This document shows positions 6,660 through 59,326 of a stretch of 64,000 bases of DNA, in pieces. The stretch spans positions 62,001 to 126,000 of IMG/VR virus record IMGVR_UViG_3300027749_002876. The stretch is one strand, 5' to 3'. The notes beneath the pieces are model-generated. The model did not search any database. It was not told the origin of the DNA and saw only the letters and a list, made by a program, of their open reading frames with translations. A program made the position numbers and the translations under genes. Each line of letters begins with the position of its first letter. Positions within the stretch are counted from its first letter, which is position 1.

Positions 6660-9563
6660 ATGGATGAATTAGATCCGCGTAAATTATACGAACTTTCGGA
6701 ATCTCTCAACGAACTTACCGGTACAGTAAAATATACCGGCACAGCCATGCAGTCCATGTTGGGACCTCAGGCTGAAGCAAACAAGAAATTAAAAAACTCA
6801 GGTAAAAAACGTGCCAAGGTTGAAGAACAGGCGGCTGAACAACAAGCAAAGCAGTTAACCAAACAGGAAGAATCTCAAGCAAAACAGAAAAAAATGCTTG
6901 ATGATGAGTTACGATATCGCGGCTACGCAATAGATGCAACAGGTAACTTAACTAAAACAACCACATCACTAAGTGGTGCTCAAAAGCAAGCACTAGAATC
7001 ATTGGATAAGCGTATTGCCAAAGAGCGTGAACTTGCTGAAGTAATTAAAGATCCAGTCAAATCATTTAGAAGCATATCAAGCAGTATAAACAGCCTCGAC
7101 GGTGTTATGGGCCAGATGCAGGAGAAGATGTTTGAGATGACTGGTAAGAGCGTGCCAATGGCAGCAGGTCTTATCGCAGCCACAGCAGTTGTCGGTGGAG
7201 TAGTTAAAGCCGCAACCGGAATGGCTGACTCACTATATAAAGGTGAACGTGGTGCTAAAGTTGGTGCTAAAGCAGTTAAAGATTTAAATGATTCAGTAAC
7301 TAAAGCCGCATATGGTATCAGTGCGGCACTGATGTTTATGCCCGGATTGGGAATTGTTGCTAAAGTATTAGGAGCCGCAATTGGGCTGTTTTCTTTGGCA
7401 ATGGAGGGTTCCACAAAACTAATAGAAATGGGTGCAGAGTATAACGATAAGGTATACGATTCATTCAATAAATTAAGCGAGACGGGGTTAATAACAGCTA
7501 AGGGCATGAGTGGTGTTAGTAACACCATGGAAAAGCTAGGAGTAACAAGTGCTGAAATAGAGAAGATGAATTCTCTATTAGCAAGCAACTCAAAAGACTT
7601 AGCATTATTTGGTGGGACTGCGGCAGGTGGATTAGAAAAATTCACAGAAGTTGCCGGAACTATTTCACATCCAGCAAGTGAATTAAACAAAAAATTAATG
7701 TTGCTTGGTATATCAAGTGACGAACAAAGAGAACATACATTAAAGTACATGGCTTTGCAAACACGCATGGGCATGACGCAAGGCAAGACACAAGCTGACC
7801 TAGTTAAAGGTTCTGTTGCCTACATGGAAGAACTAGATAGAATTGCTTCTATCACTGGAATAGGTCGTAAAGAACAAGAAGAAGCACAGAAGCAGGTAAT
7901 GGCTATTGAAGAATTACGTGCGGCAATGTTCCAAGCTGAACGTAGTAGTGATACTAAACGACAAAAAGAATTAGAAACAGCATTTAAATACTCTAGCCGA
8001 TTGATGGCTGAGGGTAGAAAGAAAGAAGCGGCCGGTGTTGCTAAGTATTATGCCGCAGGTAAAAATGTTGTTGACAGTGATTCGGCAATGGCAGCACAGA
8101 ATAGTGCAGGTGCTATTAAAGCTATTGGTGAAGGTAAAGAAGGCGAAGATGTTTATCAAGAAGGCATCAAGAGTGCTAAAGAATCTGCTATACGTACAGC
8201 AGGCACTAAGCGAATTGGCGGTGATGTGTCTAATCAAATTGGAGACTTCAATGCTACACTAGATGCTATTAAACGTAGTGAGAAGTCGCAAGAGGAAATG
8301 AAGAAACTGGGTCTAAGTCCAGAAGCATATGCTAAAAAACTTCAAAAAGAAAAAGAAGAAAAGCCTGATCCAAATTTAGCAAAGAATGTTGATGCTATGC
8401 AGATACAGCAGAAGGCTGGTTTGACAATGGATCAAGCGGCAAAGGCAATGGATGGTGCAGGTCTTGCAATGGCATCATCAGTTAAGGCATTTAATGAGGC
8501 AGTGAAATTATTTAATCAAGCTTCTGGTACTGGCCCAGCACAAGGAGCCGCAGTAGAGAAAGCTAAACAAGCAGATACAGCGGCATTGAATAAACAACAA
8601 GCCGCAATGGATGCTAATAAGAAAACGCAAAATGATCCAACTGCAACAAAAGCACAAAAAGAATCTGCACAAAAATCAGAGGATGATGCTAATAAAGAGT
8701 CAATGAAGGCAATGGCGGCTAAGAGAGAAGCCTTCCTAAAAGAACAAAATGAATTACGTGAACTAAACAAAAAACAACGTGGTTCCGGCAAAGAAGTATT
8801 CAAGACCATGGAAGATGCACGAAAGGCTGGAGCCGCACCAAAAGCTGAAACAGCTCCGACGGCGGCTGCACCAAAAGCTGAAACAGCTCCGACGCAGGCT
8901 GCTAAGCCGGCATCATCACCTACGCCATCACCCGGTGCACCTTCAGAAGGTCACAGTGAAGGGGGTACAGAAAAATCAGCACCACCGGCTGCGCCAACAT
9001 CGGCTCCACCAGTTTCATTAAAATCAAGCTCAACCAAAACTGATTTATTAATAGCAAATGAACCAGTCACTGCTGATAAGCCATTAAGTAAAACACAAAT
9101 GTCAATAATTGAGCTTGGTATTAGTCAAGGAAATAAATTCTCTGACATGGTAATGCAAAAGTTCAATTCTCAAATGTTTGGTGCCAAACCAGTAGCTCCA
9201 AATTCTAAACCTGTGGGTGATGTTGAAATTCCAATTGACAAGGCTGCGACCGGGGGAGTATTTGACGGGCCGGGTAAGAATTCAGTAATGCTAAACAATA
9301 GCACTATGGCTGCAAATGATATATTAGCTTCACTCAGAGAATCATTTGGTAGTGTTCAAAAGAAATCAGTTGAGAGTGAATTACCAAAATTAACTAAATT
9401 TAATACAATGACTTCTTCAAGTAGAGGTATTTCAACAAATAGTTCAATGGACATACTAGAAAAATTTACTGACATTATGGAACAGAAACTATCCGACGTT
9501 ATAGATGCTATATCGGATAACAATAACATTAAAGAAGAAATCTTACTTTACAGTAAAGCATAA
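6660..9563 (+). CDS. Long alpha-helical virion protein (tape-measure/baseplate-hub-like)
   Basis: 967 aa, Ala/Lys/Glu-rich coiled coil, hydrophobic Gly/Ala segment, Pro-rich linker, late promoter upstream. Confidence 0.5.
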   Translation: MDELDPRKLYELSESLNELTGTVKYTGTAMQSMLGPQAEANKKLKNSGKKRAKVEEQAAEQQAKQLTKQEESQAKQKKMLDDELRYRGYAIDATGNLTKTTTSLSGAQKQALESLDKRIAKERELAEVIKDPVKSFRSISSSINSLDGVMGQMQEKMFEMTGKSVPMAAGLIAATAVVGGVVKAATGMADSLYKGERGAKVGAKAVKDLNDSVTKAAYGISAALMFMPGLGIVAKVLGAAIGLFSLAMEGSTKLIEMGAEYNDKVYDSFNKLSETGLITAKGMSGVSNTMEKLGVTSAEIEKMNSLLASNSKDLALFGGTAAGGLEKFTEVAGTISHPASELNKKLMLLGISSDEQREHTLKYMALQTRMGMTQGKTQADLVKGSVAYMEELDRIASITGIGRKEQEEAQKQVMAIEELRAAMFQAERSSDTKRQKELETAFKYSSRLMAEGRKKEAAGVAKYYAAGKNVVDSDSAMAAQNSAGAIKAIGEGKEGEDVYQEGIKSAKESAIRTAGTKRIGGDVSNQIGDFNATLDAIKRSEKSQEEMKKLGLSPEAYAKKLQKEKEEKPDPNLAKNVDAMQIQQKAGLTMDQAAKAMDGAGLAMASSVKAFNEAVKLFNQASGTGPAQGAAVEKAKQADTAALNKQQAAMDANKKTQNDPTATKAQKESAQKSEDDANKESMKAMAAKREAFLKEQNELRELNKKQRGSGKEVFKTMEDARKAGAAPKAETAPTAAAPKAETAPTQAAKPASSPTPSPGAPSEGHSEGGTEKSAPPAAPTSAPPVSLKSSSTKTDLLIANEPVTADKPLSKTQMSIIELGISQGNKFSDMVMQKFNSQMFGAKPVAPNSKPVGDVEIPIDKAATGGVFDGPGKNSVMLNNSTMAANDILASLRESFGSVQKKSVESELPKLTKFNTMTSSSRGISTNSSMDILEKFTDIMEQKLSDVIDAISDNNNIKEEILLYSKA

Positions 9564-9581
9564 TTCAAAGGTCGTATCAAA

Positions 9582-10232
9582 ATGGAAAAAACAATAGCAC
9601 TATTCATTAATCATCCCGAATGCTCTCAAGATTGTTGCGACGGTATGATACAGTCACTTGGACAAGACTATAATATCAAACTATTTAGGGTCAATGAATG
9701 TAATAGTGAAACATTATCATCAGTTGATATGGTCGCATTTCCAGGTGGTATTGGTGATGCCAGTTCATATGATAAATTTTTTAGAAGAAAAGCACAAAAT
9801 GCTGTAGCAGATTATGTGCAACAAGGTGGACGATATTTAGGAATATGTATGGGTGCGTATTGGGCTGGAAGTTATTACTTTGACATACTTGATAATGTTG
9901 ATGCTGTGCAGTACATACGACAACCAACTAGTGATATCAAACGATCCTATAGCACTATTGCGTCAATTAACTGGAACAACCAATCTGAAGATATGTTTTT
10001 TTATGACGGGTGTGCATTAGTTGGTGACACTAGTAAATTTAAAACTATTGCAACTTATGCAAACGGTGATGCGATGGCTATCATACAAAACAGAATAGGC
10101 TTGATAGGATGTCATCCTGAAAGCCAAGAGTACTGGTACAAAGAACCCAGGCAATATATTAATCAATACTGGCATCAAGGCAAACATCATTCGTTACTAT
10201 TAGAATTTGTCAATCAGTTGATGACACAATAG
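9582..10232 (+). CDS. Class I glutamine amidotransferase-like (BPL_N-type) protein
   Basis: FPGG, GGRYLGICMGAY nucleophile elbow, GCHPE. Confidence 0.8.
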   Translation: MEKTIALFINHPECSQDCCDGMIQSLGQDYNIKLFRVNECNSETLSSVDMVAFPGGIGDASSYDKFFRRKAQNAVADYVQQGGRYLGICMGAYWAGSYYFDILDNVDAVQYIRQPTSDIKRSYSTIASINWNNQSEDMFFYDGCALVGDTSKFKTIATYANGDAMAIIQNRIGLIGCHPESQEYWYKEPRQYINQYWHQGKHHSLLLEFVNQLMTQ

Positions 10233-10252
10233 TTAGAGTATAGAAATCAATA

Positions 10253-10274
10253 GAGCCCCAAAAGGGGCTTTTTT
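10253..10274 (+). terminator. Rho-independent terminator
   Basis: AGCCCC-AAAA-GGGGCT followed by a T-tract. Confidence 0.85.
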
Positions 10275-10282
10275 AATGGCTA

Positions 10283-10437
10283 AAAATGAGTACTTTTGTA
10301 TCTCAAAAAGGTAAACTTTAGTACTCATTTTCACCTCCCAGGTGCTTCAAAATCGCTAGAGGTTTTAGGGACGCATACTGACACACTTCTATCGGAATTC
10401 GCCAAAACTTGACAATAAATTGTTTTGGGTGTATGAT
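10283..10437 (+). repeat. Non-coding element, copy A (inverted copy at 41916-42060), ending in an early promoter
   Basis: 19-nt exact core GCTTCAAAATCGCTAGAGG; about 78% identity over ~118 nt by manual alignment. Confidence 0.9.
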
Positions 10438-10467
10438 GCAGTTTTACACACACATGGAGTTAGTTAA

Positions 10468-10983
10468 ATGAGCAAAGTACTAATTGGCTTAGCAACTATA
10501 TCAGCGGTTGCAATTCTAGGAGTTCAACAATATCAACTTGCTACCATCTCAGAAGATGTAGCCGAAATCAAACAAGCCTTCATTGCACAAACCACCGAAC
10601 GTGTTTCATATAGTGAAAGTGATGAAGCATGTCTTGCTAAAAATATTTACTACGAAGCCGGTATTGAAAGTGACCATGGTAAGTATGCTGTAGCACAAGT
10701 TACACTAAACCGATTGAAGACAGGTCGTTGGGGTGATACAATTTGTAGCGTGGTCTATTCCAAAGCACAGTTTAGTTGGACATTAAAAAAGAAACTAGAA
10801 AAACCCAATGGTCAAGCATGGGCTGATAGTCAATGGATTGCTCATAGAGTATTGGGAGGTGAGCGTGTGCCTCCTCTCAGTGAAGCCATTTTTTACCATG
10901 CTGATTATGTAAGTCCGTATTGGAAGAGTAGTGTTGTAAAAATACAACAAGTTGGCCAGCATATCTTCTATACCAAAATTTGA
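10468..10983 (+). CDS. Cell-wall hydrolase (SleB/Hydrolase_2 family)
   Basis: CLAKNIYYEA, AVAQVTLNR, TICSVVY..AQFSW, FYHADYVSP.W, GQHIFY; N-terminal anchor. Confidence 0.92.
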   Translation: MSKVLIGLATISAVAILGVQQYQLATISEDVAEIKQAFIAQTTERVSYSESDEACLAKNIYYEAGIESDHGKYAVAQVTLNRLKTGRWGDTICSVVYSKAQFSWTLKKKLEKPNGQAWADSQWIAHRVLGGERVPPLSEAIFYHADYVSPYWKSSVVKIQQVGQHIFYTKI

Positions 10984-11035
10984 CAATAAATCGTTTTGGG
11001 CTTATAATAGAATCTTAAACAGTAAAGAAAAGGAC
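10980..11035 (+). promoter_or_regulatory. Early promoter cassette
   Basis: TTGACAATAAAT...TATAATAGAATCTTAAACAGTAAAGAAAAGGA. Confidence 0.9.
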
Positions 11036-11040
11036 TAGAA

Positions 11041-11313
11041 ATGACACAAGTTTATGATCGTTTGACAGAGCAGGAAAAACGTGAAGTTCGTATGTATGGC
11101 GTTACCGAAGCAGGTATGCGTGAATCTATAGAACAAAGTATTACTTTTAAATTCTCAGGTCCTGCAATGATCGCCGCTAGCCTGATGAGTGACGCCCAGG
11201 AAATGATTAATCCTGAATACGGTGATGTTGACTATATGCGAGCCGAGGATGCCCGTCAATGTCTGAATCGTGCCAAATGGGTTCTCTTTGAATATGTCAT
11301 GTCCAAAACTTGA
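11041..11313 (+). CDS. Early hypothetical protein
   Basis: Promoter and SD upstream; stop codon lies in the next -35. Confidence 0.75.
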   Translation: MTQVYDRLTEQEKREVRMYGVTEAGMRESIEQSITFKFSGPAMIAASLMSDAQEMINPEYGDVDYMRAEDARQCLNRAKWVLFEYVMSKT

Positions 11314-11365
11314 CAATAAATAGGTATTCTGCTATAATAGAATCTTAGACAGTCAAACAAAGGAT
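11310..11365 (+). promoter_or_regulatory. Early promoter cassette
   Basis: TTGACAATAAAT...TATAATAGAATCTTAGACAG...AAGGA. Confidence 0.9.
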
Positions 11366-11370
11366 ACAAA

Positions 11371-11538
11371 ATGCAAATCGCAACAGCAATCAAAGTAATA
11401 CAAAAAGATGCAGAATTCTTGGGTATGGGTTTCTTGGAAATGATGCAGTTTATTCAAAAAGACCCATTAGCACAAACACACAAAACATTAGAAGCATACA
11501 ATGTAATTAAGTTTGCAGGTGCTAAGTTTTTTGCCTAA
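11371..11538 (+). CDS. Early hypothetical protein, 55 aa (MQIATAIKVIQKDAEFLG...), not in the ORF track
   Basis: AAGGA SD; fills the gap between two promoters. Confidence 0.75.
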   Translation: MQIATAIKVIQKDAEFLGMGFLEMMQFIQKDPLAQTHKTLEAYNVIKFAGAKFFA

Positions 11539-11540
11539 AT

Positions 11541-11593
11541 TTGACAATAAATCAAATTGGGTATATAATAGAGTCTTATTCAATCAAAAGGAA
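11541..11593 (+). promoter_or_regulatory. Early promoter cassette
   Basis: TTGACAATAAAT...TATAATAGAGTCTT. Confidence 0.9.
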
Positions 11594-11598
11594 ACAAA

Positions 11599-11946
11599 AT
11601 GTTAGTAGTCCATAAATTTCTCAAAACCGATGGCAAGGGTTACTGGTCACAAGTTGTTAGATCCGTTAAAGTTACAGGTTTTGACCTGGACTACGTGAAT
11701 GAAGAAGGTGACTTTGGTGAGTTGCGTGTATACTTTGATACTAAGTATTGGGACGTTAACAGTATGGGCCTGATCTATACTGACAAACAATTCCTGAAAG
11801 AATTGAAAACACTGTTGGCCGAACAACATCTCGGTACTGACGTTTCATATTCCGAGCAAGGTATGCAAGGTGATACTTTTGTATCACTGGATTGCGGATC
11901 CGAATTCATCAAATCTTTCCAAAATTTGCTTACAGTGGAACTGTGA
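11599..11946 (+). CDS. Early hypothetical protein
   Basis: SD and promoter upstream. Confidence 0.75.
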   Translation: MLVVHKFLKTDGKGYWSQVVRSVKVTGFDLDYVNEEGDFGELRVYFDTKYWDVNSMGLIYTDKQFLKELKTLLAEQHLGTDVSYSEQGMQGDTFVSLDCGSEFIKSFQNLLTVEL

Positions 11947-11959
11947 AAGGTAATACTAA

Positions 11960-12181
11960 ATGACTAAATTTGAAAACCTCCAGGAACTATTGTCTTTGCT
12001 CAACGAAGCGCAGGATTTGATTGAAGAAATTTACGGTGATGCAGACGAGGCTTTTGACATGTCCATCAACCTTAGTAATGTCATCTCCGATGTAGAGGTT
12101 GAGATAGATTTTGAGGACATTAAACTTGACCAAAATTTGACAATAAATGGTGTTCCTGTTATAATAGAATCTAGACAATAA
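11960..12181 (+). CDS. Acidic hypothetical protein whose 3' end reads through the next promoter
   Basis: AAGGT SD; Asp/Glu-rich. Confidence 0.65.
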   Translation: MTKFENLQELLSLLNEAQDLIEEIYGDADEAFDMSINLSNVISDVEVEIDFEDIKLDQNLTINGVPVIIESRQ

Positions 12182-12190
12182 AGAAAAGGA
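12137..12190 (+). promoter_or_regulatory. Early promoter cassette
   Basis: TTGACAATAAAT...TATAATAGAATCT. Confidence 0.88.
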
Positions 12191-12196
12191 CTCAAA

Positions 12197-12469
12197 ATGC
12201 GTACAAAAACTATCATTGACGGCTTCAATAACTCACAAAAATTCCGTGTAATTTTTAAGGGTGACGGAAGCGAAAACGATATCGGTATGTACTTGACTAT
12301 CAAGCAAATGTCCGAGCAATTTGCTACAGTTAACGCCCGCACACTTTGCTGGGATGCTATGCTTAAATTGTCTTATTTGCGTTATGAAGCCAAGCGCAAA
12401 AATGAGACAGTTCCGACAGGTCTCGGTGACACATTTAGGGGCAAACAAGTCCAAGTTGACTTGGTATAA
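12197..12469 (+). CDS. Early hypothetical protein
   Basis: AAGGA SD. Confidence 0.75.
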   Translation: MRTKTIIDGFNNSQKFRVIFKGDGSENDIGMYLTIKQMSEQFATVNARTLCWDAMLKLSYLRYEAKRKNETVPTGLGDTFRGKQVQVDLV

Positions 12470-12528
12470 AAGGTTGACAATAAATCACTTTGGGTATATA
12501 ATAGAATCTTAAACAGTAAAGAAACGGA
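12468..12528 (+). repeat. ~60-bp promoter direct repeat, identical to 12814-12874
   Basis: AAAAGGTTGACAATAAATCACTTTGGGTATATAATAGAATCTTAAACAGTAAAGAAACGGA present twice. Confidence 0.95.
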
Positions 12529-12534
12529 GTTAAT

Positions 12535-12810
12535 ATGAAAAAATCACTAATTGCAACATTGTTATTAGTATCAGGAATTGCTCATGCTGGAATTGAGCAG
12601 CCGCTTCAACAAGCAATTAACCAAGTAGGATCATCATGTGATAAGGTAACTCAAGTTTTTCAGAGTAGCGGGACATATAATATGTACAGTGTTGCATGTT
12701 CCGGTGGACAAACATATATGGTTCTAGTTAAACCTGAAACTAATTCAGCTAAGGTTATGACATGCCGAGAAATGGCAATGATTGGTACAAAGTGTTTTGT
12801 CAAATTGTAA
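12535..12810 (+). CDS. Small secreted protein with four Cys
   Basis: Signal peptide ending in AHA; flanked by the identical repeats. Confidence 0.75.
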   Translation: MKKSLIATLLLVSGIAHAGIEQPLQQAINQVGSSCDKVTQVFQSSGTYNMYSVACSGGQTYMVLVKPETNSAKVMTCREMAMIGTKCFVKL

Positions 12811-12813
12811 TTT

Positions 12814-12874
12814 AAAAGGTTGACAATAAATCACTTTGGGTATATAATAGAATCTTAAACAGTAAAGAAACGGA
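12814..12874 (+). repeat. Second copy of the ~60-bp promoter repeat
   Basis: Identical to 12468-12528. Confidence 0.95.
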
Positions 12875-12881
12875 ACACAAA

Positions 12882-13364
12882 ATGGCAACTCGCTCAACAA
12901 TCGCTCTCGAATTCGCTGATGGTACTATTGGTCAAGTATATTGTCACTGGGATGGTTACTTGGCTCACAACGGTAAAATGTTGCAGGAGTATTATTCTAA
13001 CCCCTTTGTTTTGCGTGACTTGATTGACCTCGGTGGGTTGTCTGGCTTGCGCCCAACAATCGGTACAAAACATCCCTTCAGTATGTACGAAGCAAACATG
13101 ACACAGGATGAATACGCTAACCTGTATCGTGACATGTGTACATTCTATGGCCGTGATCGTGGCGAAGGCGAATCTGATGCAAATTACTTCAAGGACTTTG
13201 CAGACTTCAAAGACAATGGTCAAGCTGAAGAATACGATTACATCCTGCGTAACGTGAATGGCGTTGCTACTTGGTTCGTATCCGATCATGGTGGAGACTA
13301 CATGTTGTTGACTGAGGCATTTGCTAAAGAAGCCGAAGCAGAAAAAGAAGAATTGCCCTTATAA
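12882..13364 (+). CDS. Conserved phage hypothetical protein
   Basis: MATRS.I...VYCHWDGY, YGRDRGE, EEYDY motifs. Confidence 0.8.
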   Translation: MATRSTIALEFADGTIGQVYCHWDGYLAHNGKMLQEYYSNPFVLRDLIDLGGLSGLRPTIGTKHPFSMYEANMTQDEYANLYRDMCTFYGRDRGEGESDANYFKDFADFKDNGQAEEYDYILRNVNGVATWFVSDHGGDYMLLTEAFAKEAEAEKEELPL

Positions 13365-37516: not shown

Positions 37517-37548
37517 AACCCATATTATAGCATGAGTCTTATTTATTG

Positions 37549-38877
37549 TCAACCTAAATTTTTAAGTTCTGTACTGATGGATTCTAGCACATTGTCCCAT
37601 GTTCCATTTGTCTGACGGAATAGTCTCATGCAATCATAGAATGGGCTATCGTTACGATTCATAAACCAACGCCAATCACACCCGTAATCAGTTAACATCA
37701 CCCAAGTGGGAACTCCCATTGCACCACTCAGGTGAGGGATAACTGTATCAATTGATATCACCAAATCTAGTTGGCTAATTAATCCTGCTGTATTGTAAAA
37801 GCCAGTTAAGTTTTCATGGAATGTTTTGACATTATACTTTGCTAATGTCTCCAATATTTGTTCATCCACTTCATATGATAGACTAATAAATTCATAATCA
37901 TCATTTGTTATTGATAATAATTGTTCTAATTCAATTCTACGGAAGCGTGATATGAATGCAATCTTATTTGGACTAGACAATAATCCAATTCGTTTTTTAG
38001 TCTTGGGGCCTAACAATTGTTTCCACAACTGTTTCATACCTTCATCTACATCTAAATAAGGAGTAGAATAAGGGATCGTATCAATGGTTGTACTAAAACA
38101 TTTTGGTATATCCATCAATGCAACATGATAGTGATATGGTGGTATCTGTGCGTCAGCATTTAGTACAGTCAAGTCAGGCAAGTTATATTTAAACAAATCA
38201 TACAATTGTGGTTTGGTTATAACTGTTACTTCTGCACCCTTGTCTTTTAATTGTTTTGCAAAACGAATAAATTGAACACTATCACCAAATCCCTGTTCAT
38301 AGTATACGAGAACTTTCTTACCTATAATATCTTGTGATCCATCATATTCTGGCCCGGGCAAGTTAGGCTTAAGGCTTATGTCGCTTTGATAATACCAACG
38401 TGCTTCATACTTCTTCCAACCTTCAATCAAATCACCTTTCATTAAATGACTAACTGATTCGTTTAACTCATAGTTAACATTATTAGGAGTGAGACCTTGT
38501 GCTATTTGTAAAAAAGGAATAGCAAGTTCAGGTAATCCAAACTCACGCAAGGTGTTGCCGTAATTACTGTATGCTGTTGAATGTTTGGGGTCGAGAGCAA
38601 AGGTGTGTGCAAATGTAATTAATGCTTCCCTATAATGTCCCAAACTGCGTAATGCTGTTCCTCTACTTAGCCAACTTTCAACATAGTTATGACTGCATGG
38701 TAATTCAAAGCATTCTAATGCTTCTACATCTCTACCTAACTGTGATAGTGTAATGCCAAGATTATGCCACACTATATAATTCTGTGGCTCTTGTTCTAAA
38801 AATCTTCTGTAACATTCACTGGCTTCGTGATACTCTTTAGCCATGTAGTGAATGTTACCTTGTTCAAAGTCGTTCAT
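37549..38877 (-). CDS. TPR-repeat glycosyltransferase (GT9-like C-terminus)
   Basis: TPRs; EGW..YE.RW, EQGFGD..QF.RF, TA.LI..LDLVISIDT...HL.GA.G.PTW, W.W..R.DSP.Y..RLFRQ. Confidence 0.9.
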   Translation of the reverse strand: MNDFEQGNIHYMAKEYHEASECYRRFLEQEPQNYIVWHNLGITLSQLGRDVEALECFELPCSHNYVESWLSRGTALRSLGHYREALITFAHTFALDPKHSTAYSNYGNTLREFGLPELAIPFLQIAQGLTPNNVNYELNESVSHLMKGDLIEGWKKYEARWYYQSDISLKPNLPGPEYDGSQDIIGKKVLVYYEQGFGDSVQFIRFAKQLKDKGAEVTVITKPQLYDLFKYNLPDLTVLNADAQIPPYHYHVALMDIPKCFSTTIDTIPYSTPYLDVDEGMKQLWKQLLGPKTKKRIGLLSSPNKIAFISRFRRIELEQLLSITNDDYEFISLSYEVDEQILETLAKYNVKTFHENLTGFYNTAGLISQLDLVISIDTVIPHLSGAMGVPTWVMLTDYGCDWRWFMNRNDSPFYDCMRLFRQTNGTWDNVLESISTELKNLG

Positions 38878-41647: not shown

Positions 41648-41684
41648 AAGTGTATTATATACCCAAATTGATTTATTGTCAACC

Positions 41685-41915: not shown

Positions 41916-42060
41916 ATTATACACTAAAGCCCATTTATTGTCAACTGTTGGTAAAATCGCTAGAAGTGTATCAGAGTGCGTTCCTGAATCCTCTAGCGAT
42001 TTTGAAGCCCCTGAGGGGGCAAAAGTAGTACTTTTGTTTCTTAAATATGTAGTACTAAAG
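41916..42060 (-). repeat. Non-coding element, copy B (inverted relative to copy A), ending in an early promoter
   Basis: AAAATCGCTAGA...TCTAGCGATTTT 12-bp inverted repeat at 41953-42003; GCCCC-TGA-GGGGGC. Confidence 0.9.
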
Positions 42061-53292: not shown

Positions 53293-53368
53293 TGGCATCC
53301 CGGGTAAGCCTCGAACTTACAACCCCTGGTTTTGGAGACCAGTGCTCTGCCAATTGAGCTACCGAGAT
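53293..53368 (-). tRNA. tRNA-Trp(CCA)
   Basis: Cloverleaf, encoded CCA end. Confidence 0.93.
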
Positions 53369-53375
53369 ATATTCT

Positions 53376-53597
53376 TTATGCGTTTTTTCTAATACGCTTG
53401 AGGTATTCTCTACCCACAAGTCCTGCTTCAATTTCTTGAAGTGCAGTCACAATAGGACCTGCTTTAGAGACTAGTGTAGAACGATGTCCACGCTTTAACT
53501 CTCTTACTCTATGTGAAGCGATAAGAACTAAATCAAATCGATTACCAACCATATTAACGGCGTCTTCACTTGTATATCTTGCTCTGCTTTCAGTCAT
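53376..53597 (-). CDS. rpoZ: RNA polymerase omega subunit
   Basis: AR.T.EDA...VGNRFDLVLIAS.R.REL...TAL.EI..G. Confidence 0.9.
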   Translation of the reverse strand: MTESRARYTSEDAVNMVGNRFDLVLIASHRVRELKRGHRSTLVSKAGPIVTALQEIEAGLVGREYLKRIRKNA

Positions 53598-53608
53598 TTT
53601 CTTCCTTT

Positions 53609-54208
53609 TTAAAATTCAAACATTAATCTTTTCATTGTCTCAAAATAAATTTTAGGTCTTAATGCTAATGCAGGCCTTAATGTTAATACAACTCTTTCAT
53701 TATCTGATTGTGAATTATCCCAATCGTGAAATATTTCGGTATTAAACAATATTGCTTCATTGGGCTGAGCCACCATTGATTTAACCGGGGAGTGTTTAGT
53801 TTTATCAAATCCAACACATTCCCTTGATCCATTATGTTTAGGATCGATTTCATACATAGATAAATCTTCATCACTATACCAGCTGGTCACACACTTATCA
53901 TCTAATATTTTAGAAGTATAATTTATACTAACATGGTCAAATGATCCGTCTTTATGAGCCCTATATGTCATATGCGGCTTTGATATGAATAACGATACCC
54001 GATCAATTTCTAATGGTGGAAATTTTAAGGGAATCATACTCAGCATTTTTTTAGATTCATCTGGCTGTAATTTATAATGAGTAAAATCTTCATTTATCTT
54101 ATAAATATCCGGGGTGATTACATTGCAATAATCTATTATAGACTGTATACCGGCGTGAGTATATCTAATATAATAAGGACTACAATCTTCAATGATTTCG
54201 TATTTCAT
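53609..54208 (-). CDS. Fe(II)/2OG oxygenase- or cupin-like protein
   Basis: AHKD...LFNT...H...N...R..L..R. Confidence 0.6.
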   Translation of the reverse strand: MKYEIIEDCSPYYIRYTHAGIQSIIDYCNVITPDIYKINEDFTHYKLQPDESKKMLSMIPLKFPPLEIDRVSLFISKPHMTYRAHKDGSFDHVSINYTSKILDDKCVTSWYSDEDLSMYEIDPKHNGSRECVGFDKTKHSPVKSMVAQPNEAILFNTEIFHDWDNSQSDNERVVLTLRPALALRPKIYFETMKRLMFEF

Positions 54209-54210
54209 GC

Positions 54211-54864
54211 TTACTCTAAAAATAATAGGTTGTTATTTTTAAATACATCTCTCCAGTATCCTGTGTTAGGTATCAGAGCCCATAATTTAGTATTTTCAAA
54301 AACTATCAATGTTCTATTTTTTTTTGTTTGATTTAATGCGACCGCAACCCCATTAAACCAGGGATGAAAATCATCTCCTAGTAATAATCCGGTATCGGAT
54401 TCATACTTTTCAATATCATGTTTAACATCCAATAATGTATGTGAAGCATCAATAAAGGTAAGATCGTAATGTTTTACTTTCTCAAAATCTTTGCTAGAAG
54501 TAGGGTGTACATTTATATTAGCATACATTTCTTCACCTATACAAAATCTAAATGCATCATGCCATCCTGTAGCTTTTGCAATTTCTCTTGCATCAGCATA
54601 CATAATAGGATCGCCTAGTGCAAATTGCAAATTTTCAAACTCAATATTTAATAATGATTGGCTAGAAACAATTCTAAAATTATCAACTATATCCATGCTT
54701 ACAGAAGAATTTTTACCTCTATAGAGGGCAGTAGTAGAACTACCCAAAAAACAACCTATTTCTAAAATAGAACCATTATCAGGAACATAACCAGCCAATG
54801 TTGAAAGAATTATTAATTCTTTTTCGAGCATCCAACCCGGAATGTTTACATTGTATTTTTGCAT
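54211..54864 (-). CDS. Class I SAM methyltransferase
   Basis: PGWM, LEIGC..GSST, FIDASH, GDD. Confidence 0.85.
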   Translation of the reverse strand: MQKYNVNIPGWMLEKELIILSTLAGYVPDNGSILEIGCFLGSSTTALYRGKNSSVSMDIVDNFRIVSSQSLLNIEFENLQFALGDPIMYADAREIAKATGWHDAFRFCIGEEMYANINVHPTSSKDFEKVKHYDLTFIDASHTLLDVKHDIEKYESDTGLLLGDDFHPWFNGVAVALNQTKKNRTLIVFENTKLWALIPNTGYWRDVFKNNNLLFLE

Positions 54865-54884
54865 ATTGTATTTATGTTTATATT

Positions 54885-54960
54885 TGGAGCGGGAAATCGG
54901 GTTCGAACCGACGACATTCACGTTGGCAACGTGATGCTCTACCAACTGAGCTATTCCCGC
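54885..54960 (-). tRNA. tRNA-Gly(GCC)
   Basis: Cloverleaf. Confidence 0.95.
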
Positions 54961-54967
54961 ATATTCT

Positions 54968-55042
54968 TGGTACATCGACACGGTTTCGAACCGCGGACCC
55001 TCTCCGTGTAAAGGAGACGCTCTACCCCTGAGCTATCGATGC
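54968..55042 (-). tRNA. tRNA-Val(TAC)
   Basis: Cloverleaf. Confidence 0.95.
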
Positions 55043-55052
55043 ATATTTTTAT

Positions 55053-55232
55053 TTAACCCCCTTGAGAGCTGTCTTTAACTTCTGTTTCTCTAGCAATTTT
55101 TTCAAACGCTTCATCTTCATTCTTTTGATCCTCAATCATTCTTGGATCAGGCTTACGAAAGATTTTGTCATAGTTGTTTGCATATTCTTGTTGACTGACA
55201 CTGTATGGTCTTGGACTAGAACCTTTGCTCAC
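55053..55232 (-). CDS. Small protein, 59 aa (MSKGSSPRPYSVSQQEY...DKIF), GTG start, not in the ORF track
   Basis: GTGA overlap with the upstream ORF. Confidence 0.6.
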   Translation of the reverse strand: MSKGSSPRPYSVSQQEYANNYDKIFRKPDPRMIEDQKNEDEAFEKIARETEVKDSSQGG

Positions 55233-55399
55233 TTCTTGTCCCCTTTACCCCCACTGTATGATCGCAAACCTTCTTGTGCAATCTTAGCATAGCTACGCAA
55301 AAATGAACCACGTACATGTGGATCAAGAATTTGAGCGGCTGCAATCTTTACTAGCTTACCGATTTTAACGGCTTTTGGGTCATAACCTCTGCATGTCAT
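55229..55399 (-). CDS. Small hypothetical protein
   Basis: AGGA SD before MTCRGYD. Confidence 0.6.
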   Translation of the reverse strand: MTCRGYDPKAVKIGKLVKIAAAQILDPHVRGSFLRSYAKIAQEGLRSYSGGKGDKK

Positions 55400-55422
55400 A
55401 CTATCTTCCTTTGTTAAAAACT

Positions 55423-55499
55423 TGGTCGGAATAGTAGGATTCGAACCTACGACCTCTTGCTCCCAAAGCAAGCGCACTACCAGGCTGTGCTACACTCCG
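55423..55499 (-). tRNA. tRNA-Pro(TGG)
   Basis: Cloverleaf. Confidence 0.95.
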
Positions 55500-55503
55500 T
55501 AAT

Positions 55504-55577
55504 TGGATGCGGGTGACAGATTCGAACTGCCGATGCACCTGGCTTATGAGACCGGTGTGGTGACCACCCAACCCGCG
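55504..55577 (-). tRNA. Atypical initiator-like tRNA(CAT)
   Basis: CGCGGG 5' end, C1:A72 mismatch, truncated D-arm. Confidence 0.7.
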
Positions 55578-55581
55578 TATT

Positions 55582-56268
55582 TCACAATTCTGCATAATTA
55601 GTAATACTTGGTGGTTTAGCAAACGCATCCACATACATAATCTTACTGTTATCTTTTATTGTTAATTTATTAATGTAATTATACACTACTTCAAAAGTTT
55701 GTTTGTATATTTCGGGATTATCGTATGTAAAATGCGGAGCTATAGCTGTTGCTATTGCACCTTTGTCATTGTGTTCGGCAAATGCCCTCATCATGTGAGC
55801 TTGCATTGCTTTGCTTCCTGCATACCCCGCATAACTTGTCCATTCATTACGATTGAACTTTACTGCCATATATGATATAATAAAAATAATTTTACTATTT
55901 TCATTCATTCGTTTTAATGCTTCTACACCCAAAACATGAGGTATATGGCATGCAAGTCTTATATTCTCTTCCCATCTTTTTAAGTCAACTACACTAGTAG
56001 AAGTAAAGCAATTTTCATCATTTGGATAAGAACCTGAATTGGAATTAAAAAGAATCATATCAACAGTATCAACATCTTTGGTCACTTCATTAAATGCTTC
56101 TACTACACATTGAACACTATCAAAGTTTGCTTTGATATCATGTGGATGTCCTGTATTGTAATTCTTGTGAGATACAATATAAACGTTATGACCATCAGTA
56201 CGCATACGCAATACTAGGTCATTACCAAACTTACCGGGTTCACCTCCCCCTATTATCACTATGTTCAT
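55582..56268 (-). CDS. Short-chain dehydrogenase/reductase-like protein
   Basis: IGG...G.FG, YAGSK (YxxxK). Confidence 0.75.
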   Translation of the reverse strand: MNIVIIGGGEPGKFGNDLVLRMRTDGHNVYIVSHKNYNTGHPHDIKANFDSVQCVVEAFNEVTKDVDTVDMILFNSNSGSYPNDENCFTSTSVVDLKRWEENIRLACHIPHVLGVEALKRMNENSKIIFIISYMAVKFNRNEWTSYAGYAGSKAMQAHMMRAFAEHNDKGAIATAIAPHFTYDNPEIYKQTFEVVYNYINKLTIKDNSKIMYVDAFAKPPSITNYAEL

Positions 56269-56288
56269 ATTATGAGTCCTCAAGTATT

Positions 56289-56364
56289 TGGTGGAGGATA
56301 CCAGGATCGAACTGGTCACCTACTGCTTGCAAAGCAGCCGCTCTCCCAAATGAGCTAATCCCCC
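56289..56364 (-). tRNA. tRNA-Ala(TGC)
   Basis: Cloverleaf with G3:U70. Confidence 0.95.
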
Positions 56365-56438
56365 ATGTAGAAACACACTTGATATAGTAGCAAAAGCTAT
56401 CACGGATGAACCCGAGTTTAGTCAAATATGTTTTTATA
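56365..56438 (-). ncRNA. Candidate small RNA with a long closing stem
   Basis: AUAUAAAAACAUAUUUGA/UCAAGUGUGUUUCUACAU. Confidence 0.5.
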
Positions 56439-56515
56439 TGGTGCCCCAGAGGAGACTCGAACTCCTAAAATTTGGCTTCTAAGACCAACACGTATACCAA
56501 TTCCGTCACCAGGGC
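56439..56515 (-). tRNA. tRNA-Leu(TAG) with short variable region
   Basis: Leu-type D-arm, 77 nt. Confidence 0.88.
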
Positions 56516-56516
56516 A

Positions 56517-56605
56517 GTTATAATATAACACACTACGAATCTCCTTCTAAGTTATGGACCTAGCGAGTACTCCAGTTGTGTTCATGTAATGTGTTATATT
56601 ATAAC
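56517..56605 (-). ncRNA. Candidate small RNA / 16-bp inverted repeat overlapping a promoter -10
   Basis: GTTATAATATAACACA/TGTGTTATATTATAAC; TTGACA-17-TATAAT at 56598-56626. Confidence 0.5.
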
Positions 56606-56690
56606 ATATATCTATTTATATGTCAACTATCTTTGGATAAGAAGAACTCAGACGTATGATAACCATTTACCGGTTAGTTATTACAGAGGT

Positions 56691-57227
56691 CTAAGCCGTG
56701 TTATATATTGCTAGATCACCATAGCGTTTTAAACTACACTCTATCAATTGTTTATGTTTTTCTACATCCAAGAAACCTTTAATATAAAGTGTTTCTCTCA
56801 TAAAATCTTCCTTTACTCTATGCAAACATGCGGTAAGATTAAGCAGGTATGCTATGGGCACTTGAGGCAATATAGGAGTTATCCATTCTTTGCCATTAAA
56901 TATTTCAAGCGAGTCGCATTTACCTTTTAATACTACATGATACCCAGCCGGTTCAGCTTGTGCAATGTGTTTATATTCATTAGATAAATTATCACCGGGA
57001 TAATAATCATGGTGAGGATTAACTACTATTTGTTGAAACTTATGCGTAAATGTTGTGATATCTATTATTGGTATTTGATCTAATAAACTTCTATATTGTT
57101 GATAGTTATTTTCTTTACCAAGAACTTCTTTTGTTTCCCAAAAATTTTGATGATAGGTATGTTGATCACCTAACTCAAAACTAGTTTCAGTAACGTCTAT
57201 ATCTAGTGGAACAAATAATAATTTCAT
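56691..57227 (-). CDS. Oxygenase/cupin-like hypothetical protein
   Basis: PHHD, EP.GY, H.V...R; TTAAATA-4-ATG. Confidence 0.6.
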   Translation of the reverse strand: MKLLFVPLDIDVTETSFELGDQHTYHQNFWETKEVLGKENNYQQYRSLLDQIPIIDITTFTHKFQQIVVNPHHDYYPGDNLSNEYKHIAQAEPAGYHVVLKGKCDSLEIFNGKEWITPILPQVPIAYLLNLTACLHRVKEDFMRETLYIKGFLDVEKHKQLIECSLKRYGDLAIYNTA

Positions 57228-57244
57228 CTAGTATTTAATAACAT

Positions 57245-57318
57245 TGGAGCGGGGTAACAGAATCGAACTGTCAGCATTAGCTTGGAAGGCTAAGGTATTA
57301 CCACTATACGAACCCCGC
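57245..57318 (-). tRNA. tRNA-Gly(TCC)
   Basis: Cloverleaf. Confidence 0.95.
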
Positions 57319-57330
57319 ATAAATATATTT

Positions 57331-57495
57331 ATGTACATATATGACGCTATCACAAAAACAGGACTTGTTATACACTTATCAATGAGTGCTGAACATACAT
57401 TTTACATTATGGTATTTGATATTGACAACTTCACATTGACCATGAAATTCTTCAACAACATCGAAACAGCACTTGCTTTTATACAAGCACTTTAG
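57331..57495 (+). CDS. Small protein antisense to the tRNA array
   Basis: CATAAATA just upstream of ATG. Confidence 0.5.
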   Translation: MYIYDAITKTGLVIHLSMSAEHTFYIMVFDIDNFTLTMKFFNNIETALAFIQAL

Positions 57496-57500
57496 TTAAC

Positions 57501-57578
57501 TGGAGCAACGGGTCAGATTTGAACTGACGGTTTTACGGATTTGCAATCCGTTGCATTGGGCCGCTCTGCCACCGTTGC
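57501..57578 (-). tRNA. tRNA-Cys(GCA)
   Basis: Cloverleaf, U73. Confidence 0.92.
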
Positions 57579-57582
57579 ATAT

Positions 57583-57792
57583 TGCTCCTGCATCCCCCGG
57601 CGGTAATTATACTGCATCAATCATCGGACTAGACGAATAATCCACGACAACATCACACACAGCTTCCACCCGCTTCCCGACAGGGACCGCTCTCGTGTTG
57701 CTAACGGCCTTTCGGTTCGAAGACTACCACCCGTAGTTGTCACACTACTTCTCATCCTGTGGGTCACAGTATCCGGAGACACCCGGAACGTT
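57583..57792 (-). ncRNA. Candidate ~210-nt structured RNA
   Basis: GC-rich; several hairpins; long-range GGUGGUAGU/AUUACCGCC pairing. Confidence 0.65.
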
Positions 57793-57793
57793 C

Positions 57794-57881
57794 TGGCGGA
57801 GTATGTAGGAATCGAACCTACCCACCGGTTGCCCAGTGACAGATTAGCAATCTGTTGCCTTAACCGCTCGGCCAATACTCC
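57794..57881 (-). tRNA. tRNA-Ser(GCT)
   Basis: Long variable arm. Confidence 0.95.
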
Positions 57882-57888
57882 TGATACT

Positions 57889-57965
57889 TGGTGCCTCGAA
57901 CTGGACTCGAACCAGTAACCTAACGATTATGAGTCGTGTGCTCTAACCAATTGAGCTATCAAGGC
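57889..57965 (-). tRNA. tRNA-Ile2(CAT), lysidine-type
   Basis: CGACUCAUAAUCG anticodon arm as in ileX. Confidence 0.8.
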
Positions 57966-57971
57966 ATTGTT

Positions 57972-58056
57972 TGGTACGACTGGCCGGAATCGAACCGGCA
58001 CGCTGTTGGGCGAGAGATTTTAAGTCTCTTGTGTCTACCTATTTCACCACAGTCGC
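57972..58056 (-). tRNA. tRNA-Leu(TAA)
   Basis: Long variable arm. Confidence 0.95.
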
Positions 58057-58102
58057 AAATCTTGTTACTATTATATATCATAATAGATTTGTTGTCAATG
58101 AA

Positions 58103-58319
58103 TTTGTAAGTAGTATCACCATCGTTATTGATACCATTCACCCGTGTAATAAAGTCGACCGGGACTCGGTACGCTACTTGGGATTCATCCAGCTGATACG
58201 CCATCATGTATGCCGATCCCACTCAAGCGATCAGCCGGGCATCGAACCCGCAACCTTCTACTAACTCAGTCCTTCGAAGAAACCTCATTAGCGTGACTTC
58301 ACTTGCTAACACTTACAAA
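58103..58319 (-). ncRNA. Candidate ~215-nt structured RNA
   Basis: 9-bp closing stem TTTGTAAGT/ACTTACAAA; internal T-arm-like CGGG-UUCGAUG-CCCG. Confidence 0.6.
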
Positions 58320-58320
58320 A

Positions 58321-58860
58321 CTATTTTTTCCACCACCAAACCAATCGTTCAACTGTTGGAAAATTTTTATTGATATCTAAAACAATTGGTTTACAAACTG
58401 ATAAGTTCAACTTATTAGTCCATTCATAAAATGTTTTATAACTTAATCTATGTTTAGTACCAAAATTAGATATATGATCTTCATTATGACCTATATAATC
58501 TAAAAATGGTTGCATTCTTACTACAATATATCCACCGGGCTTGATCCAACTTACAATTTTTTCTACATCATAGAATTGATTTTCTACGGGTTTATATTGT
58601 ATGGAACCTAAACAAAGTGCGATATCTATTGATTCTTTTTCAAAGACGACATCATTTACTGAAGCCTGCATATCACTATTTGGATATGGATCAGCGTCAA
58701 AGCCAATCAAATTATGTATTTTGTCCTTGAAAAGATTTTCCCCACATCCCACATCAATTACTTTTTGCGGAAATAAGGAATTTACCTCTTCAATTAAATT
58801 GTAACCTGAATATGTGAATCCACGCATTCTAGTATCATTGTAAATATAAGCTTCATTCAT
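58321..58860 (-). CDS. Class I SAM methyltransferase (paralogue of the C-terminal part of 50287-51015)
   Basis: SG..L.EEVN...P.KVIDVGCG.N.FK..I.NLIG.D, CLGSI. Confidence 0.8.
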   Translation of the reverse strand: MNEAYIYNDTRMRGFTYSGYNLIEEVNSLFPQKVIDVGCGENLFKDKIHNLIGFDADPYPNSDMQASVNDVVFEKESIDIALCLGSIQYKPVENQFYDVEKIVSWIKPGGYIVVRMQPFLDYIGHNEDHISNFGTKHRLSYKTFYEWTNKLNLSVCKPIVLDINKNFPTVERLVWWWKK

Positions 58861-58875
58861 GAAGATATTTATCGA

Positions 58876-58950
58876 TGGCGACTCGTGGGAGAATCGAACT
58901 CCCGTAATCGGATAGACAATCCGAAGTAATGACCATTATACGAACGAGCC
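58876..58950 (-). tRNA. tRNA-Asp(GTC)
   Basis: Cloverleaf. Confidence 0.93.
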
Positions 58951-59118: not shown

Positions 59119-59119
59119 A

Positions 59120-59325: not shown

Positions 59326-59326
59326 T

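What the first reader, a model, noticed from the sequence alone, without database searches (positions are those of the whole stretch)
10980..12880. Promoter-bounded gene cassettes, with the -35 box doubling as the upstream stop codon
Seen: six promoters in 1.9 kb share TTGACAATAAAT-N11-TATAATAGA(A/G)TCT...AAGGA/ACGGA, usually one gene per promoter. Two are identical over ~60 bp and flank one secreted-protein gene (12535-12810). The genes ending at 10983 and 11313 use the TGA of TTGACA as their stop, and 11960-12181 reads through a whole promoter. Established: repeated early-promoter modules (PeSL-type) mediate gene shuffling in T4-type phages. Inference: a recombination-driven, integrase-free cassette array of host-takeover or anti-defence genes, with 12535-12810 the most recent arrival.
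Basis: partly seen in the sequence, partly recalled or inferred. Interest (0 to 1): 0.6.

Follow-up and report, generated by a model that had tools for sequence, protein, structure and literature searches.

The report
Repeated early-promoter modules bounding swappable phage genes
A run of near-identical host-type promoters in an uncultured freshwater T4-type jumbo phage marks a gene-swapping hot spot. At least one small exported-protein gene was gained by an exact promoter-to-promoter insertion, as already described for T4-like phages, so this is a good new example and not a new principle.

Summary
Seven co-directional sigma70-type modules lie at window 10404-12889. Each has an A-tract, TTGACAATAAAT, an 11-nt spacer, TATAAT, a conserved leader and an RBS. 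There are 23 such sites in the window against 0.55 expected, and about 50 in the 524-kb record. The two modules flanking 12535-12810 are identical over 62 nt. Two genes stop on the TGA of TTGACA, and one gene reads through a promoter.

The phage is T4-type: gp23 and the gp20 portal are present. It has no tyrosine or serine recombinase and carries a RecA/UvsX-like gene.

Among 65 related IMG/VR loci, the region between ClpP and the 160-aa anchor gene is hypervariable. The slot between the 90-aa gene and the anchor has at least 9 states. The closest A-like relative, L072 (86-88% nt), lacks exactly one 346-nt promoter-to-promoter unit there. Five independent assemblies reproduce the cassette.

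This is PeSL-like modular shuffling, but without the stem-loop/terminator. The promoters are not the main driver of plasticity. Rare genes carry their own promoter less often than common ones, and genome-wide differences are not enriched at promoters. The proposed host-takeover or anti-defence function is untested.

The parts
10404..10478 (+). Promoter module 0: TTGACAATAAAT-N11-TATGAT, one mismatch in the -10, with a different leader. It lies ahead of the cell-wall hydrolase gene.
10468..10983 (+). 171-aa Hydrolase_2 (SleB-type) cell-wall hydrolase with a hydrophobic N-terminus. Its stop codon is the TGA of the next -35 box. It is absent from part B and from most relatives, and is bounded by promoters on both sides.
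10975..11049 (+). Promoter module 1 (perfect -35, 17-nt spacing, perfect -10, leader, AAGGA RBS).
11041..11313 (+). 90-aa ORFan (family 3, 27 ORFs across the 67 loci compared). Its stop is the TGA of the next -35. Its C-terminus differs from the part-B homologue right at the module edge.
11305..11379 (+). Promoter module 2 (with extended -10 TG).
11371..11538 (+). 55-aa ORFan (family 29). Relatives encode 86 aa. About 95 nt of the 3' end are missing here, directly upstream of module 3.
11536..11610 (+). Promoter module 3 (leader variant AGAGTCTTATTCA).
11599..11946 (+). 115-aa ORFan (family 40). Part B, L009 and L012 carry an unrelated 73-aa gene at this position (71 aa in L014). In other lineages family 40 sits directly upstream of the anchor, flanked by that lineage's own sigma70 promoters.
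11960..12181 (+). 73-aa ORFan (family 54) with no promoter of its own. Its last 15 codons are the translation of promoter module 4.
12132..12206 (+). Promoter module 4, embedded in the 3' end of the 73-aa gene.
12197..12469 (+). 90-aa ORFan (family 12; 20 ORFs in the 67 loci compared; mean column identity 83% over 16 distinct sequences). It forms the left border of the variable slot.
12467..12528 (+). Promoter module 5 (P_up), 62/62 identical to module 6.
12535..12810 (+). 91-aa exported protein with a Sec signal peptide and four invariant Cys. The model is one helix on a 4-stranded sheet, and function is unknown. This is the cassette gene: it is absent from all 65 related loci and from part B.
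12813..12874 (+). Promoter module 6 (P_down), the duplicate of module 5. It drives the anchor gene and the promoter-less genes after it.
12882..13364 (+). 160-aa conserved anchor gene (phrog_1987, unknown function), the right border of the variable slot. It was used to fetch the 65 related loci.

Best explanation
The region is part of an early-gene hyperplastic region of an uncultured freshwater T4-type jumbo phage.

Each module is a near-consensus host sigma70 promoter: an A-tract, TTGACA, a 17-nt spacer and TATAAT. It is fused to a conserved 25-30-nt leader and a Shine-Dalgarno site. No terminators lie between the genes, so transcription from successive promoters adds up.

The 60-75-nt modules recur in direct orientation every 230-600 bp, and they are shared by co-infecting relatives. 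The phage's general homologous-recombination machinery (a UvsX/RecA-type recombinase) can therefore cross over inside them. The outcomes are exact deletion, duplication, insertion or replacement of single genes that arrive already equipped with a promoter, an RBS and a nearby stop codon.

The 346-nt unit holding 12535-12810 was gained this way in the lineage of this genome part, and recently.

Shown: the modules, the hypervariability, the exact module-to-module indel, the lack of integrases, and the reproducibility of the array in independent assemblies. Inferred: promoter activity, early timing, the recombination pathway, and insertion rather than loss. Promoter-mediated exchange is one contributor. 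Other indels in the same region have junctions outside the modules.
For: - Modules. A consensus over 154 distinct instances in this record and its relatives extends through the leader and RBS.
- T4-type identity.
- No Phage_integrase or Resolvase family in the 524 kb, and one RecA-family gene.
- In 65 related loci, the shared genes keep their order while the occupants change. The slot between family 12 and the anchor is empty in L015, L016, L020, L023 and L072. Elsewhere it holds one of at least 8 unrelated genes.
- In the empty loci a single 66-nt module joins the two borders.
- L072 is colinear with the window at 86-88% identity, and its one module aligns to both P_up and P_down. The difference is therefore exactly one 346-nt repeat unit.
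- L020 and L015 carry the spacer of the L026 upstream module joined to a downstream-type leader, as expected for crossovers inside the module.
- The flanking modules are 62/62 identical here, against 34-48/62 in the other promoter-gene-promoter cases.
- A second case: in L052 the family-40 gene is flanked by two promoters with identical -35 to -10 stretches of a different module type.
- Assemblies from other samples give the same array at 99.97-100% identity (L082-L084). Gene tables of two more place the 91-aa gene in the same neighbourhood.
- The mechanism is established for T4-type phages (PMC2839356 and PMC4122927).
Against: - No near-isogenic pair was available. The nearest relative lacking the cassette is only 86-88% identical, so crossover points are inferred and not mapped.
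- Rare gene families have their own promoter less often than common ones (26/115 vs 62/117, Fisher p = 2e-6).
- Six of the slot's occupants lack a promoter on the left and one lacks it on the right.
- Differences between the two genome parts of the record are not enriched at promoters.
- Homologues of the cassette gene in distant lineages carry a different promoter module. Transfer between lineages therefore cannot have used full-module homology.
- Identical flanking modules could also come from recent gene conversion.
- There are no expression data and no evidence for circles. Only contigs could be laid, and they break at every promoter.
Confidence: 0.7

Rival explanations
1. The promoters are bystanders. 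They are simply strong early promoters kept alike by selection for RNA polymerase binding, and perhaps for a phage regulator. Gene turnover in the region comes from ordinary illegitimate recombination and deletion, and junctions fall next to promoters only because promoters fill most intergenic space.
For: - Rare genes carry a promoter less often than common genes.
- Inserts of families 116, 179, 50 and 136 start directly after the stop of the 90-aa gene, with no repeat on the left.
- The neighbouring stretch between the 109-aa and 282-aa genes is also variable and has almost no promoters.
- There is no genome-wide enrichment of differences at promoters.
- The module consensus is kept in relatives whose proteins are only about 66% identical, which argues for functional constraint.
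Against: - The focal indel is exactly one repeat unit, with both ends inside the module.
- Empty-slot promoters are composites of upstream-type and downstream-type halves.
- Perfectly duplicated flanking modules are seen here and in L052.
- Recombination between such elements has been shown by experiment in T4-type phages.
Confidence: 0.22
2. Assembly artefact. The 344-nt piece between two identical 62-nt repeats was misplaced by the assembler and belongs elsewhere, or to another phage in the sample.
For: - Logan contigs break at every promoter, and the piece 12499-12842 is a separate contig.
- The 524-kb record itself looks like a chimeric join of two genomes.
Against: - Assemblies from other JGI samples place the 91-aa gene in the same neighbourhood: L082, L083 and L084 at 99.97-100% identity, L085 at 99.8% over its right-hand 1,021 nt, and one more by its gene table only.
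- The depth of the piece tracks its flanks in two runs: 6.6/9.5/11.4 and 28.9/24.2/23.1.
- This spacer variant of the module occurs only at these two places in the record.
Confidence: 0.03
3. Site-specific or nuclease-driven mobility, either integron-like or by a homing endonuclease, with the module acting as a recognition site.
For: Only the regular one-gene cassette layout and the strict conservation of ATAAAT after the -35 box.
Against: - No tyrosine or serine recombinase in the record.
- No nuclease or recombinase domain among the ten ORFs scanned, the eight array genes from the hydrolase to the anchor plus one neighbour on each side.
- No conserved inverted repeat or stem. Pairing between the upstream tract and the spacer is no better than with swapped spacers: 5.14 vs 5.10 +/- 0.08.
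- Crossover positions differ between loci.
Confidence: 0.03

Closest known systems
PeSL (promoter-early stem-loop) cassettes of T4-type phages: RB49/phi1, PST/T4 and nt-1/KVP40 (Arbiol et al. 2010, PMC2839356; Comeau et al. 2014, PMC4122927)
   Same: - The phage is T4-type.
- Repeated near-consensus sigma70 early promoters with an AT-rich upstream tract are clustered in a hyperplastic region of small ORFans.
- Indels and replacements between relatives have junctions inside the repeated element.
- No integrase is present.
- The consensus extended beyond the hexamers is lineage-specific.
   Different: - There is no stem-loop or terminator in or beside the module, so the units are not transcriptionally insulated.
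- The conserved unit extends through the 5' leader and RBS.
- The upstream gene's stop codon commonly lies in the A-tract or in the -35 box itself.
- The genome is about 347 kb and from an uncultured freshwater lineage.
- Mini-circles and promoter activity were not tested here.
Morons of lambdoid and other phages (single genes with their own promoter and terminator, added between existing genes)
   Same: Single accessory genes carry their own promoter and are inserted between conserved neighbours. Their origin is foreign: the homologue in a distant lineage is 66% identical, against 31-38% for other shared proteins.
   Different: The flanking regulatory sequence is a conserved repeat that can itself serve as the recombination substrate. 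There is no terminator, and the genes sit in a dense tandem array.
Integron gene cassettes
   Same: There is a tandem array of mostly single-gene units, with a hot-spot slot that has many alternative occupants.
   Different: There is no integrase and no attC-type imperfect inverted repeat. Each unit has its own promoter instead of a shared Pc, and exchange is by homologous recombination.
Intergenic promoter-bearing repeats of halovirus HF2 (PMC8707807)
   Same: Repeated intergenic sequences of tens of nucleotides carry the promoters of a viral genome.
   Different: HF2 is an archaeal virus with a different promoter type. I did not read that paper beyond the abstract listed, so its bearing on gene shuffling is not assessed.

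Membership tests
PeSL cassettes of T4-type phages | Host genome is a T4-type phage | tested here: met
   Pfam Gp23 major capsid E 4.4e-99 and Portal_T4 E 6.1e-103 in the record. They lie in part B. The window lies in the colinear part A.
PeSL cassettes of T4-type phages | Repeated strong sigma70-like early promoter with an AT-rich tract upstream of the -35 | tested here: met
   12/12 hexamer matches with a 17-nt spacer at six sites and 11/12 at a seventh. The A-tract consensus 'aaaat' precedes TTGACA in 154 instances. Promoter activity itself was not measured.
PeSL cassettes of T4-type phages | Stem-loop able to act as terminator or attenuator within or next to the promoter | tested here: not met
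   - No terminator-like site on the + strand inside the array.
- Folding z-scores of the six modules range from -1.7 to +1.9.
- Upstream/spacer pairing is no better than with swapped spacers.
- The TTTGGG spacer goes with the AAAAGG upstream variant, not with the complementary CCAAAA variant.
PeSL cassettes of T4-type phages | Located in hyperplastic regions, flanking ORFans that differ between relatives | tested here: met
   Gene maps of 67 loci. No Pfam or PHROG function for the small ORFs.
PeSL cassettes of T4-type phages | Indels between relatives whose junctions lie inside the repeated elements | tested here: met
   L072 against the window differs by one 346-nt module-to-module unit. L020 and L015 carry composite promoters relative to L026. 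This is not true of all indels.
PeSL cassettes of T4-type phages | Excised mini-circles formed by recombination between neighbouring elements | tested here: inconclusive
   Only Logan contigs were available. They break at each promoter, and joints between promoters cannot be told apart from other promoter-bearing loci.
Integron | Tyrosine-recombinase integrase (IntI) next to the array | tested here: not met
   No PF00589 match anywhere in the 524,565-bp record. The control genomes all match.
Integron | attC-type imperfect inverted repeats at cassette ends | tested here: not met
   No conserved stem at module ends.
Moron | Own promoter and own terminator around a single accessory gene | tested here: not met
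   The promoter is present. There is no terminator after 12535-12810 or after any other array gene on the + strand.

The most novel reading that the evidence does not exclude
The module (A-tract with a built-in stop, promoter, leader and RBS) is a lineage-specific, concertedly evolving expression-and-recombination adaptor in an open gene-exchange network among freshwater T4-type phages.

The same ORFans (the 115-aa family 40 and the exported 91-aa protein) turn up in distantly related lineages. In most of the loci examined (L037, L046, L049, L052 and L074-L078) they are flanked on both sides by the resident lineage's own module. In two cases the flanks are a perfect duplicate.

This would mean the module is regenerated at each insertion, for example by copy-choice or join-copy recombination. 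Terminator-less modules would then suffice for PeSL-type shuffling.
Probability: 0.3. Interest if true: 0.55.

Novelty: new member of a known kind. Interest (0 to 1): 0.4.

Why it matters
It extends promoter-mediated modular shuffling beyond the cultured T4-like phages where it was described (168-248-kb genomes in the pairs compared by Comeau et al.). The new setting is an uncultured lineage of about 340-kb freshwater jumbo phages. It also shows that the stem-loop half of the PeSL element is dispensable for the pattern.

The work gives a concrete and well-replicated test case: a 346-nt cassette with perfect 62-nt flanks, a relative with the slot empty, and at least 9 alternative occupants of that slot. 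This can be used to measure such recombination in natural populations.

It also sets limits on the idea, since most accessory genes in the region are not promoter-bounded.

As a by-product, the 524-kb '100% complete' record is probably two related genomes joined. That matters for anyone counting it as a megaphage.

Tried and rejected
- Cultured relatives: no DNA match for the array and no match for the 967-aa neighbour in the INPHARED phage set. The 282-aa phosphoesterase finds only hits at 37% identity or less, so there is no close cultured relative.
- IMG/VR scan with the 91-aa protein: nothing. The word search found three homologue clusters.
- Reads: only contigs could be laid (5,501 letters, within the operators' limit). 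They break at every promoter. The many 'skips' and 'goes back' joints link promoter copies, have short sides (20-53 nt) at 88% likeness, and cannot be told from other promoter-bearing loci. They give no evidence for or against circles or cassette-less variants.
- Stem-loop or terminator: rejected.
- Known RNA family in the array: none.
- Function of the cassette proteins: Pfam and PHROGs gave nothing beyond Hydrolase_2 and phrog_1987. PDB profile searches of four families gave nothing. The model of the 91-aa protein (pLDDT 66.5) gave no Foldseek hit at E <= 0.001 and only cystatin-like or DsbG-N-terminal-like arrangements at Z 5-6, below the level that means more than a common fold. The Atlas 'PepSY' lead scored 0.84, below the tool's 0.9 line.
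- Genome-wide association of A-versus-B differences with promoters: not significant.
- The idea that the -35 TGA stop is pure chance: 2 of 7 locally is what frame alone would give, but genome-wide it is used more often than frame alone predicts.
- The costly representative-protein search, complex prediction and alternative genetic codes were not used, because nothing called for them.
Full report
WHAT IS THERE

The window is bases 62,001-126,000 of a 524,565-bp IMG/VR virus record. On the + strand between 10404 and 12889 lie seven copies of a roughly 75-nt module. Each has an A-rich tract, TTGACAATAAAT, an 11-nt spacer, TATAAT, a leader (mostly AGAATCTTA.ACAGT.AA) and an AAGGA or ACGGA Shine-Dalgarno site 7-9 nt before an ATG. 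Six have perfect hexamers at 17-nt spacing, and the seventh (10409) has TATGAT. The window holds 23 matches against 0.55 expected. The record holds 49 at up to one mismatch and none for the reversed control. In nearly all copies an RBS and ATG, an ATG directly after the -10, or a tRNA gene follows on the same strand.

The genes served are, in order:
- a Hydrolase_2 (SleB-type) wall hydrolase;
- ORFans of 90, 55, 115+73 and 90 aa;
- a 91-aa exported protein;
- a conserved 160-aa gene (phrog_1987), followed by promoter-less genes.

No + strand terminator-like site lies inside the array, and there is no Rfam match.

All the details hold.
- The modules around 12535-12810 are identical over 62 nt. 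Other adjacent pairs share 38-49 of 62 positions.
- The ORFs ending at 10983 and 11313 stop on the TGA of TTGACA.
- In the whole record, 34 promoters are reached by an upstream ORF. Of these, 19 stop in the A-tract 4-13 nt earlier (typically the TAA of TAAAAGG), 10 use the -35 TGA and 5 read through.
- Ten of 15 that reach the -35 is more than the one third that frame alone gives (p = 0.0085). The two homologous genome parts make the sites partly non-independent.
- The 73-aa gene reads through promoter 12137. The same form is kept in relatives, so the tail is the translated promoter.

WHAT PHAGE

The record encodes a T4 gp23-type capsid protein and a gp20-type portal, a RecA/UvsX-family protein, and no tyrosine or serine recombinase. 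No close cultured relative exists in the phage collection. The runs that hold this DNA are freshwater and lake metagenomes.

COMPARATIVE TEST

The 160-aa gene fetched 65 related IMG/VR loci, with full contigs of up to 335-349 kb. I clustered all ORFs of these loci and of the record's two genome parts, then drew maps. The shared genes keep their order: ClpP, family 3, family 29, family 25 or 40, family 54, family 12, then a slot, then the anchor. Nearly every locus differs in content.

The slot between the 90-aa family-12 gene and the anchor is empty in L015, L016, L020, L023 and L072. Elsewhere it holds one of at least eight unrelated genes. In the empty loci, exactly one 66-nt module joins the borders.

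Three occupants, including ours, are flanked by a module on both sides. Six follow the stop codon of family 12 directly and have a module only on the right. One, in part B, has a module only on the left.

L072 is the closest A-like locus. It has the same gene order, including family 40, and is 86-88% identical. Its single module aligns to both P_up and P_down of the window. The difference is therefore one exact 346-nt repeat unit.

L020 and L015 carry the spacer of the upstream module of L026 joined to a downstream-type leader. This is the composite expected from a crossover inside the module.

The cassette gene is a singleton among all these loci. Its outside homologues (66% and 47% aa) lie in GC-richer phage-like contigs whose other shared proteins are only 31-38% identical to ours. 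There too the gene is flanked on both sides by sigma70 promoters, but of another module family. Family 40 behaves the same way. In L052 its two flanking promoters are identical from -35 to -10.

IS THE CASSETTE REAL?

Yes. L082, L083 and L084, assembled from other samples, give the same array at 99.97-100% identity. L085 matches at 99.8% over its right-hand 1,021 nt, and the gene table of a further contig (no DNA available) shows the same neighbours. In two runs the depth of the contig 12499-12842 tracks its flanks.

LIMITS OF THE PROMOTER-DRIVEN VIEW

- Rare families in the region have their own promoter less often (26/115) than common ones (62/117).
- The promoter-poor stretch after the anchor is also variable.
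- The 55-aa gene has lost about 95 nt next to, not within, a module.
- Between the two genome parts of the record, only 10 of 133 part-specific segments abut a promoter, against 7.9 +/- 2.7 at random.
- No near-isogenic pair was found, so the crossover points are inferences.
- The reads tool could offer only contigs, which break at each promoter. The joints it lists are uninformative.

MECHANISM

The most likely mechanism is that these are host-RNA-polymerase early promoters. Because they are 60-75-nt direct repeats shared among co-infecting relatives, they also act as substrates for the phage's homologous recombination. This gives exact gain, loss or replacement of ready-to-express single genes. 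That is the PeSL model shown by experiment in RB49/phi1 and inferred for T4/PST and KVP40/nt-1.

The stem-loop half of PeSL is absent. I therefore file this as working like PeSL, but not as a PeSL in the strict sense.

Illegitimate events also contribute. Transfer between lineages with different modules cannot rely on module homology.

FUNCTION

Function remains unknown. The 91-aa protein has a Sec signal peptide (read from the sequence) and four invariant cysteines. Its model is one helix on a four-stranded sheet (pLDDT 66.5), with only generic cystatin-like similarity at Z 5-6 and a sub-threshold PepSY lead.

Two of the three array genes that part B lacks encode exported proteins (the hydrolase and this one). 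That suggests envelope-directed roles such as superinfection exclusion. This is inference only. Nothing supports an anti-defence role.

VERDICT

This is a new member of a known kind, with moderate interest.

Noticed in passing
whole record G000 (window = 62,001-126,000); junction near genome 172.9 kb: The 524,565-bp '100% complete' record looks like one and a half genomes.
- Part A (1-172,923, which holds the window) is reverse-colinear at 65-91% nt identity with part B.
- Part B closes on itself: 172,924-177,012 equals 520,477-524,565 (4,089 nt, 99.6%). That gives about 347.5 kb, the size of the relatives' contigs (335-349 kb).
- gp23 and the gp20 portal occur once, only in part B.
- Two mirrored colinear tRNA arrays exist, with 31 and 25 genes.
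A chimeric join of two co-occurring related phages is likely, but a real giant inverted duplication is not excluded.
   Followed up: partly
genome 52190, 99552, 103682, 103944, 430326, 483259 (window 37524-37552, 41654-41682 and 41916-41944 on the - strand): Several promoters of the same family are followed by an ATG only 7-8 nt after the -10 box, with no leader or RBS. These are candidates for leaderless early mRNAs.
   Followed up: no
window 53293-63157 (- strand): There is an array of 27 tRNA genes in the window and 31 in this genome part. The same promoter type precedes tRNA genes at window 58070-60118.
   Followed up: partly
L085 (jgi 3300010334, 1,699 nt) against window 11833-12853: The right part is 99.8% identical to the window. 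The left part holds a family-12-like 3' end, an 88-aa family-43 gene and a diverged 5' half of the 115-aa gene, with no promoters between them. It is either a natural mosaic with a breakpoint inside a coding sequence or a chimeric short contig.
   Followed up: partly
window 6660-10983: A 967-aa protein with no match in the phage set, a BPL_N/GATase-like 216-aa protein and the SleB-type hydrolase sit between ClpP and the array. They are present here but not in part B. The 216-aa gene has a paralogue-like match at genome 182.7-183.3 kb.
   Followed up: partly
window 11919-11946: The 115-aa gene ends with CCAAAATTTG, the usual 5' edge of a module, and then diverges (direct repeat D2). In L037 the homologue stops on the TGA of a real -35 box. 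This may be the scar of a lost promoter. L072 shares it.
   Followed up: partly
genome 218-220, 269-272, 276-278, 287-288, 357-362, 452-454, 512-513 and 518-519 kb: A large dispersed family of internally repetitive sequences, 65-75% identical to one another, is scattered over the record. One member lies next to the suspected chimeric join.
   Followed up: no
related loci L038-L064, L069-L071, L074-L078: Each related lineage has dense consensus sigma70 promoters with its own extended consensus, for example GGTTGACA...TATAATA.ACAC.TACAC. This suggests concerted evolution of promoter modules within lineages.
   Followed up: partly
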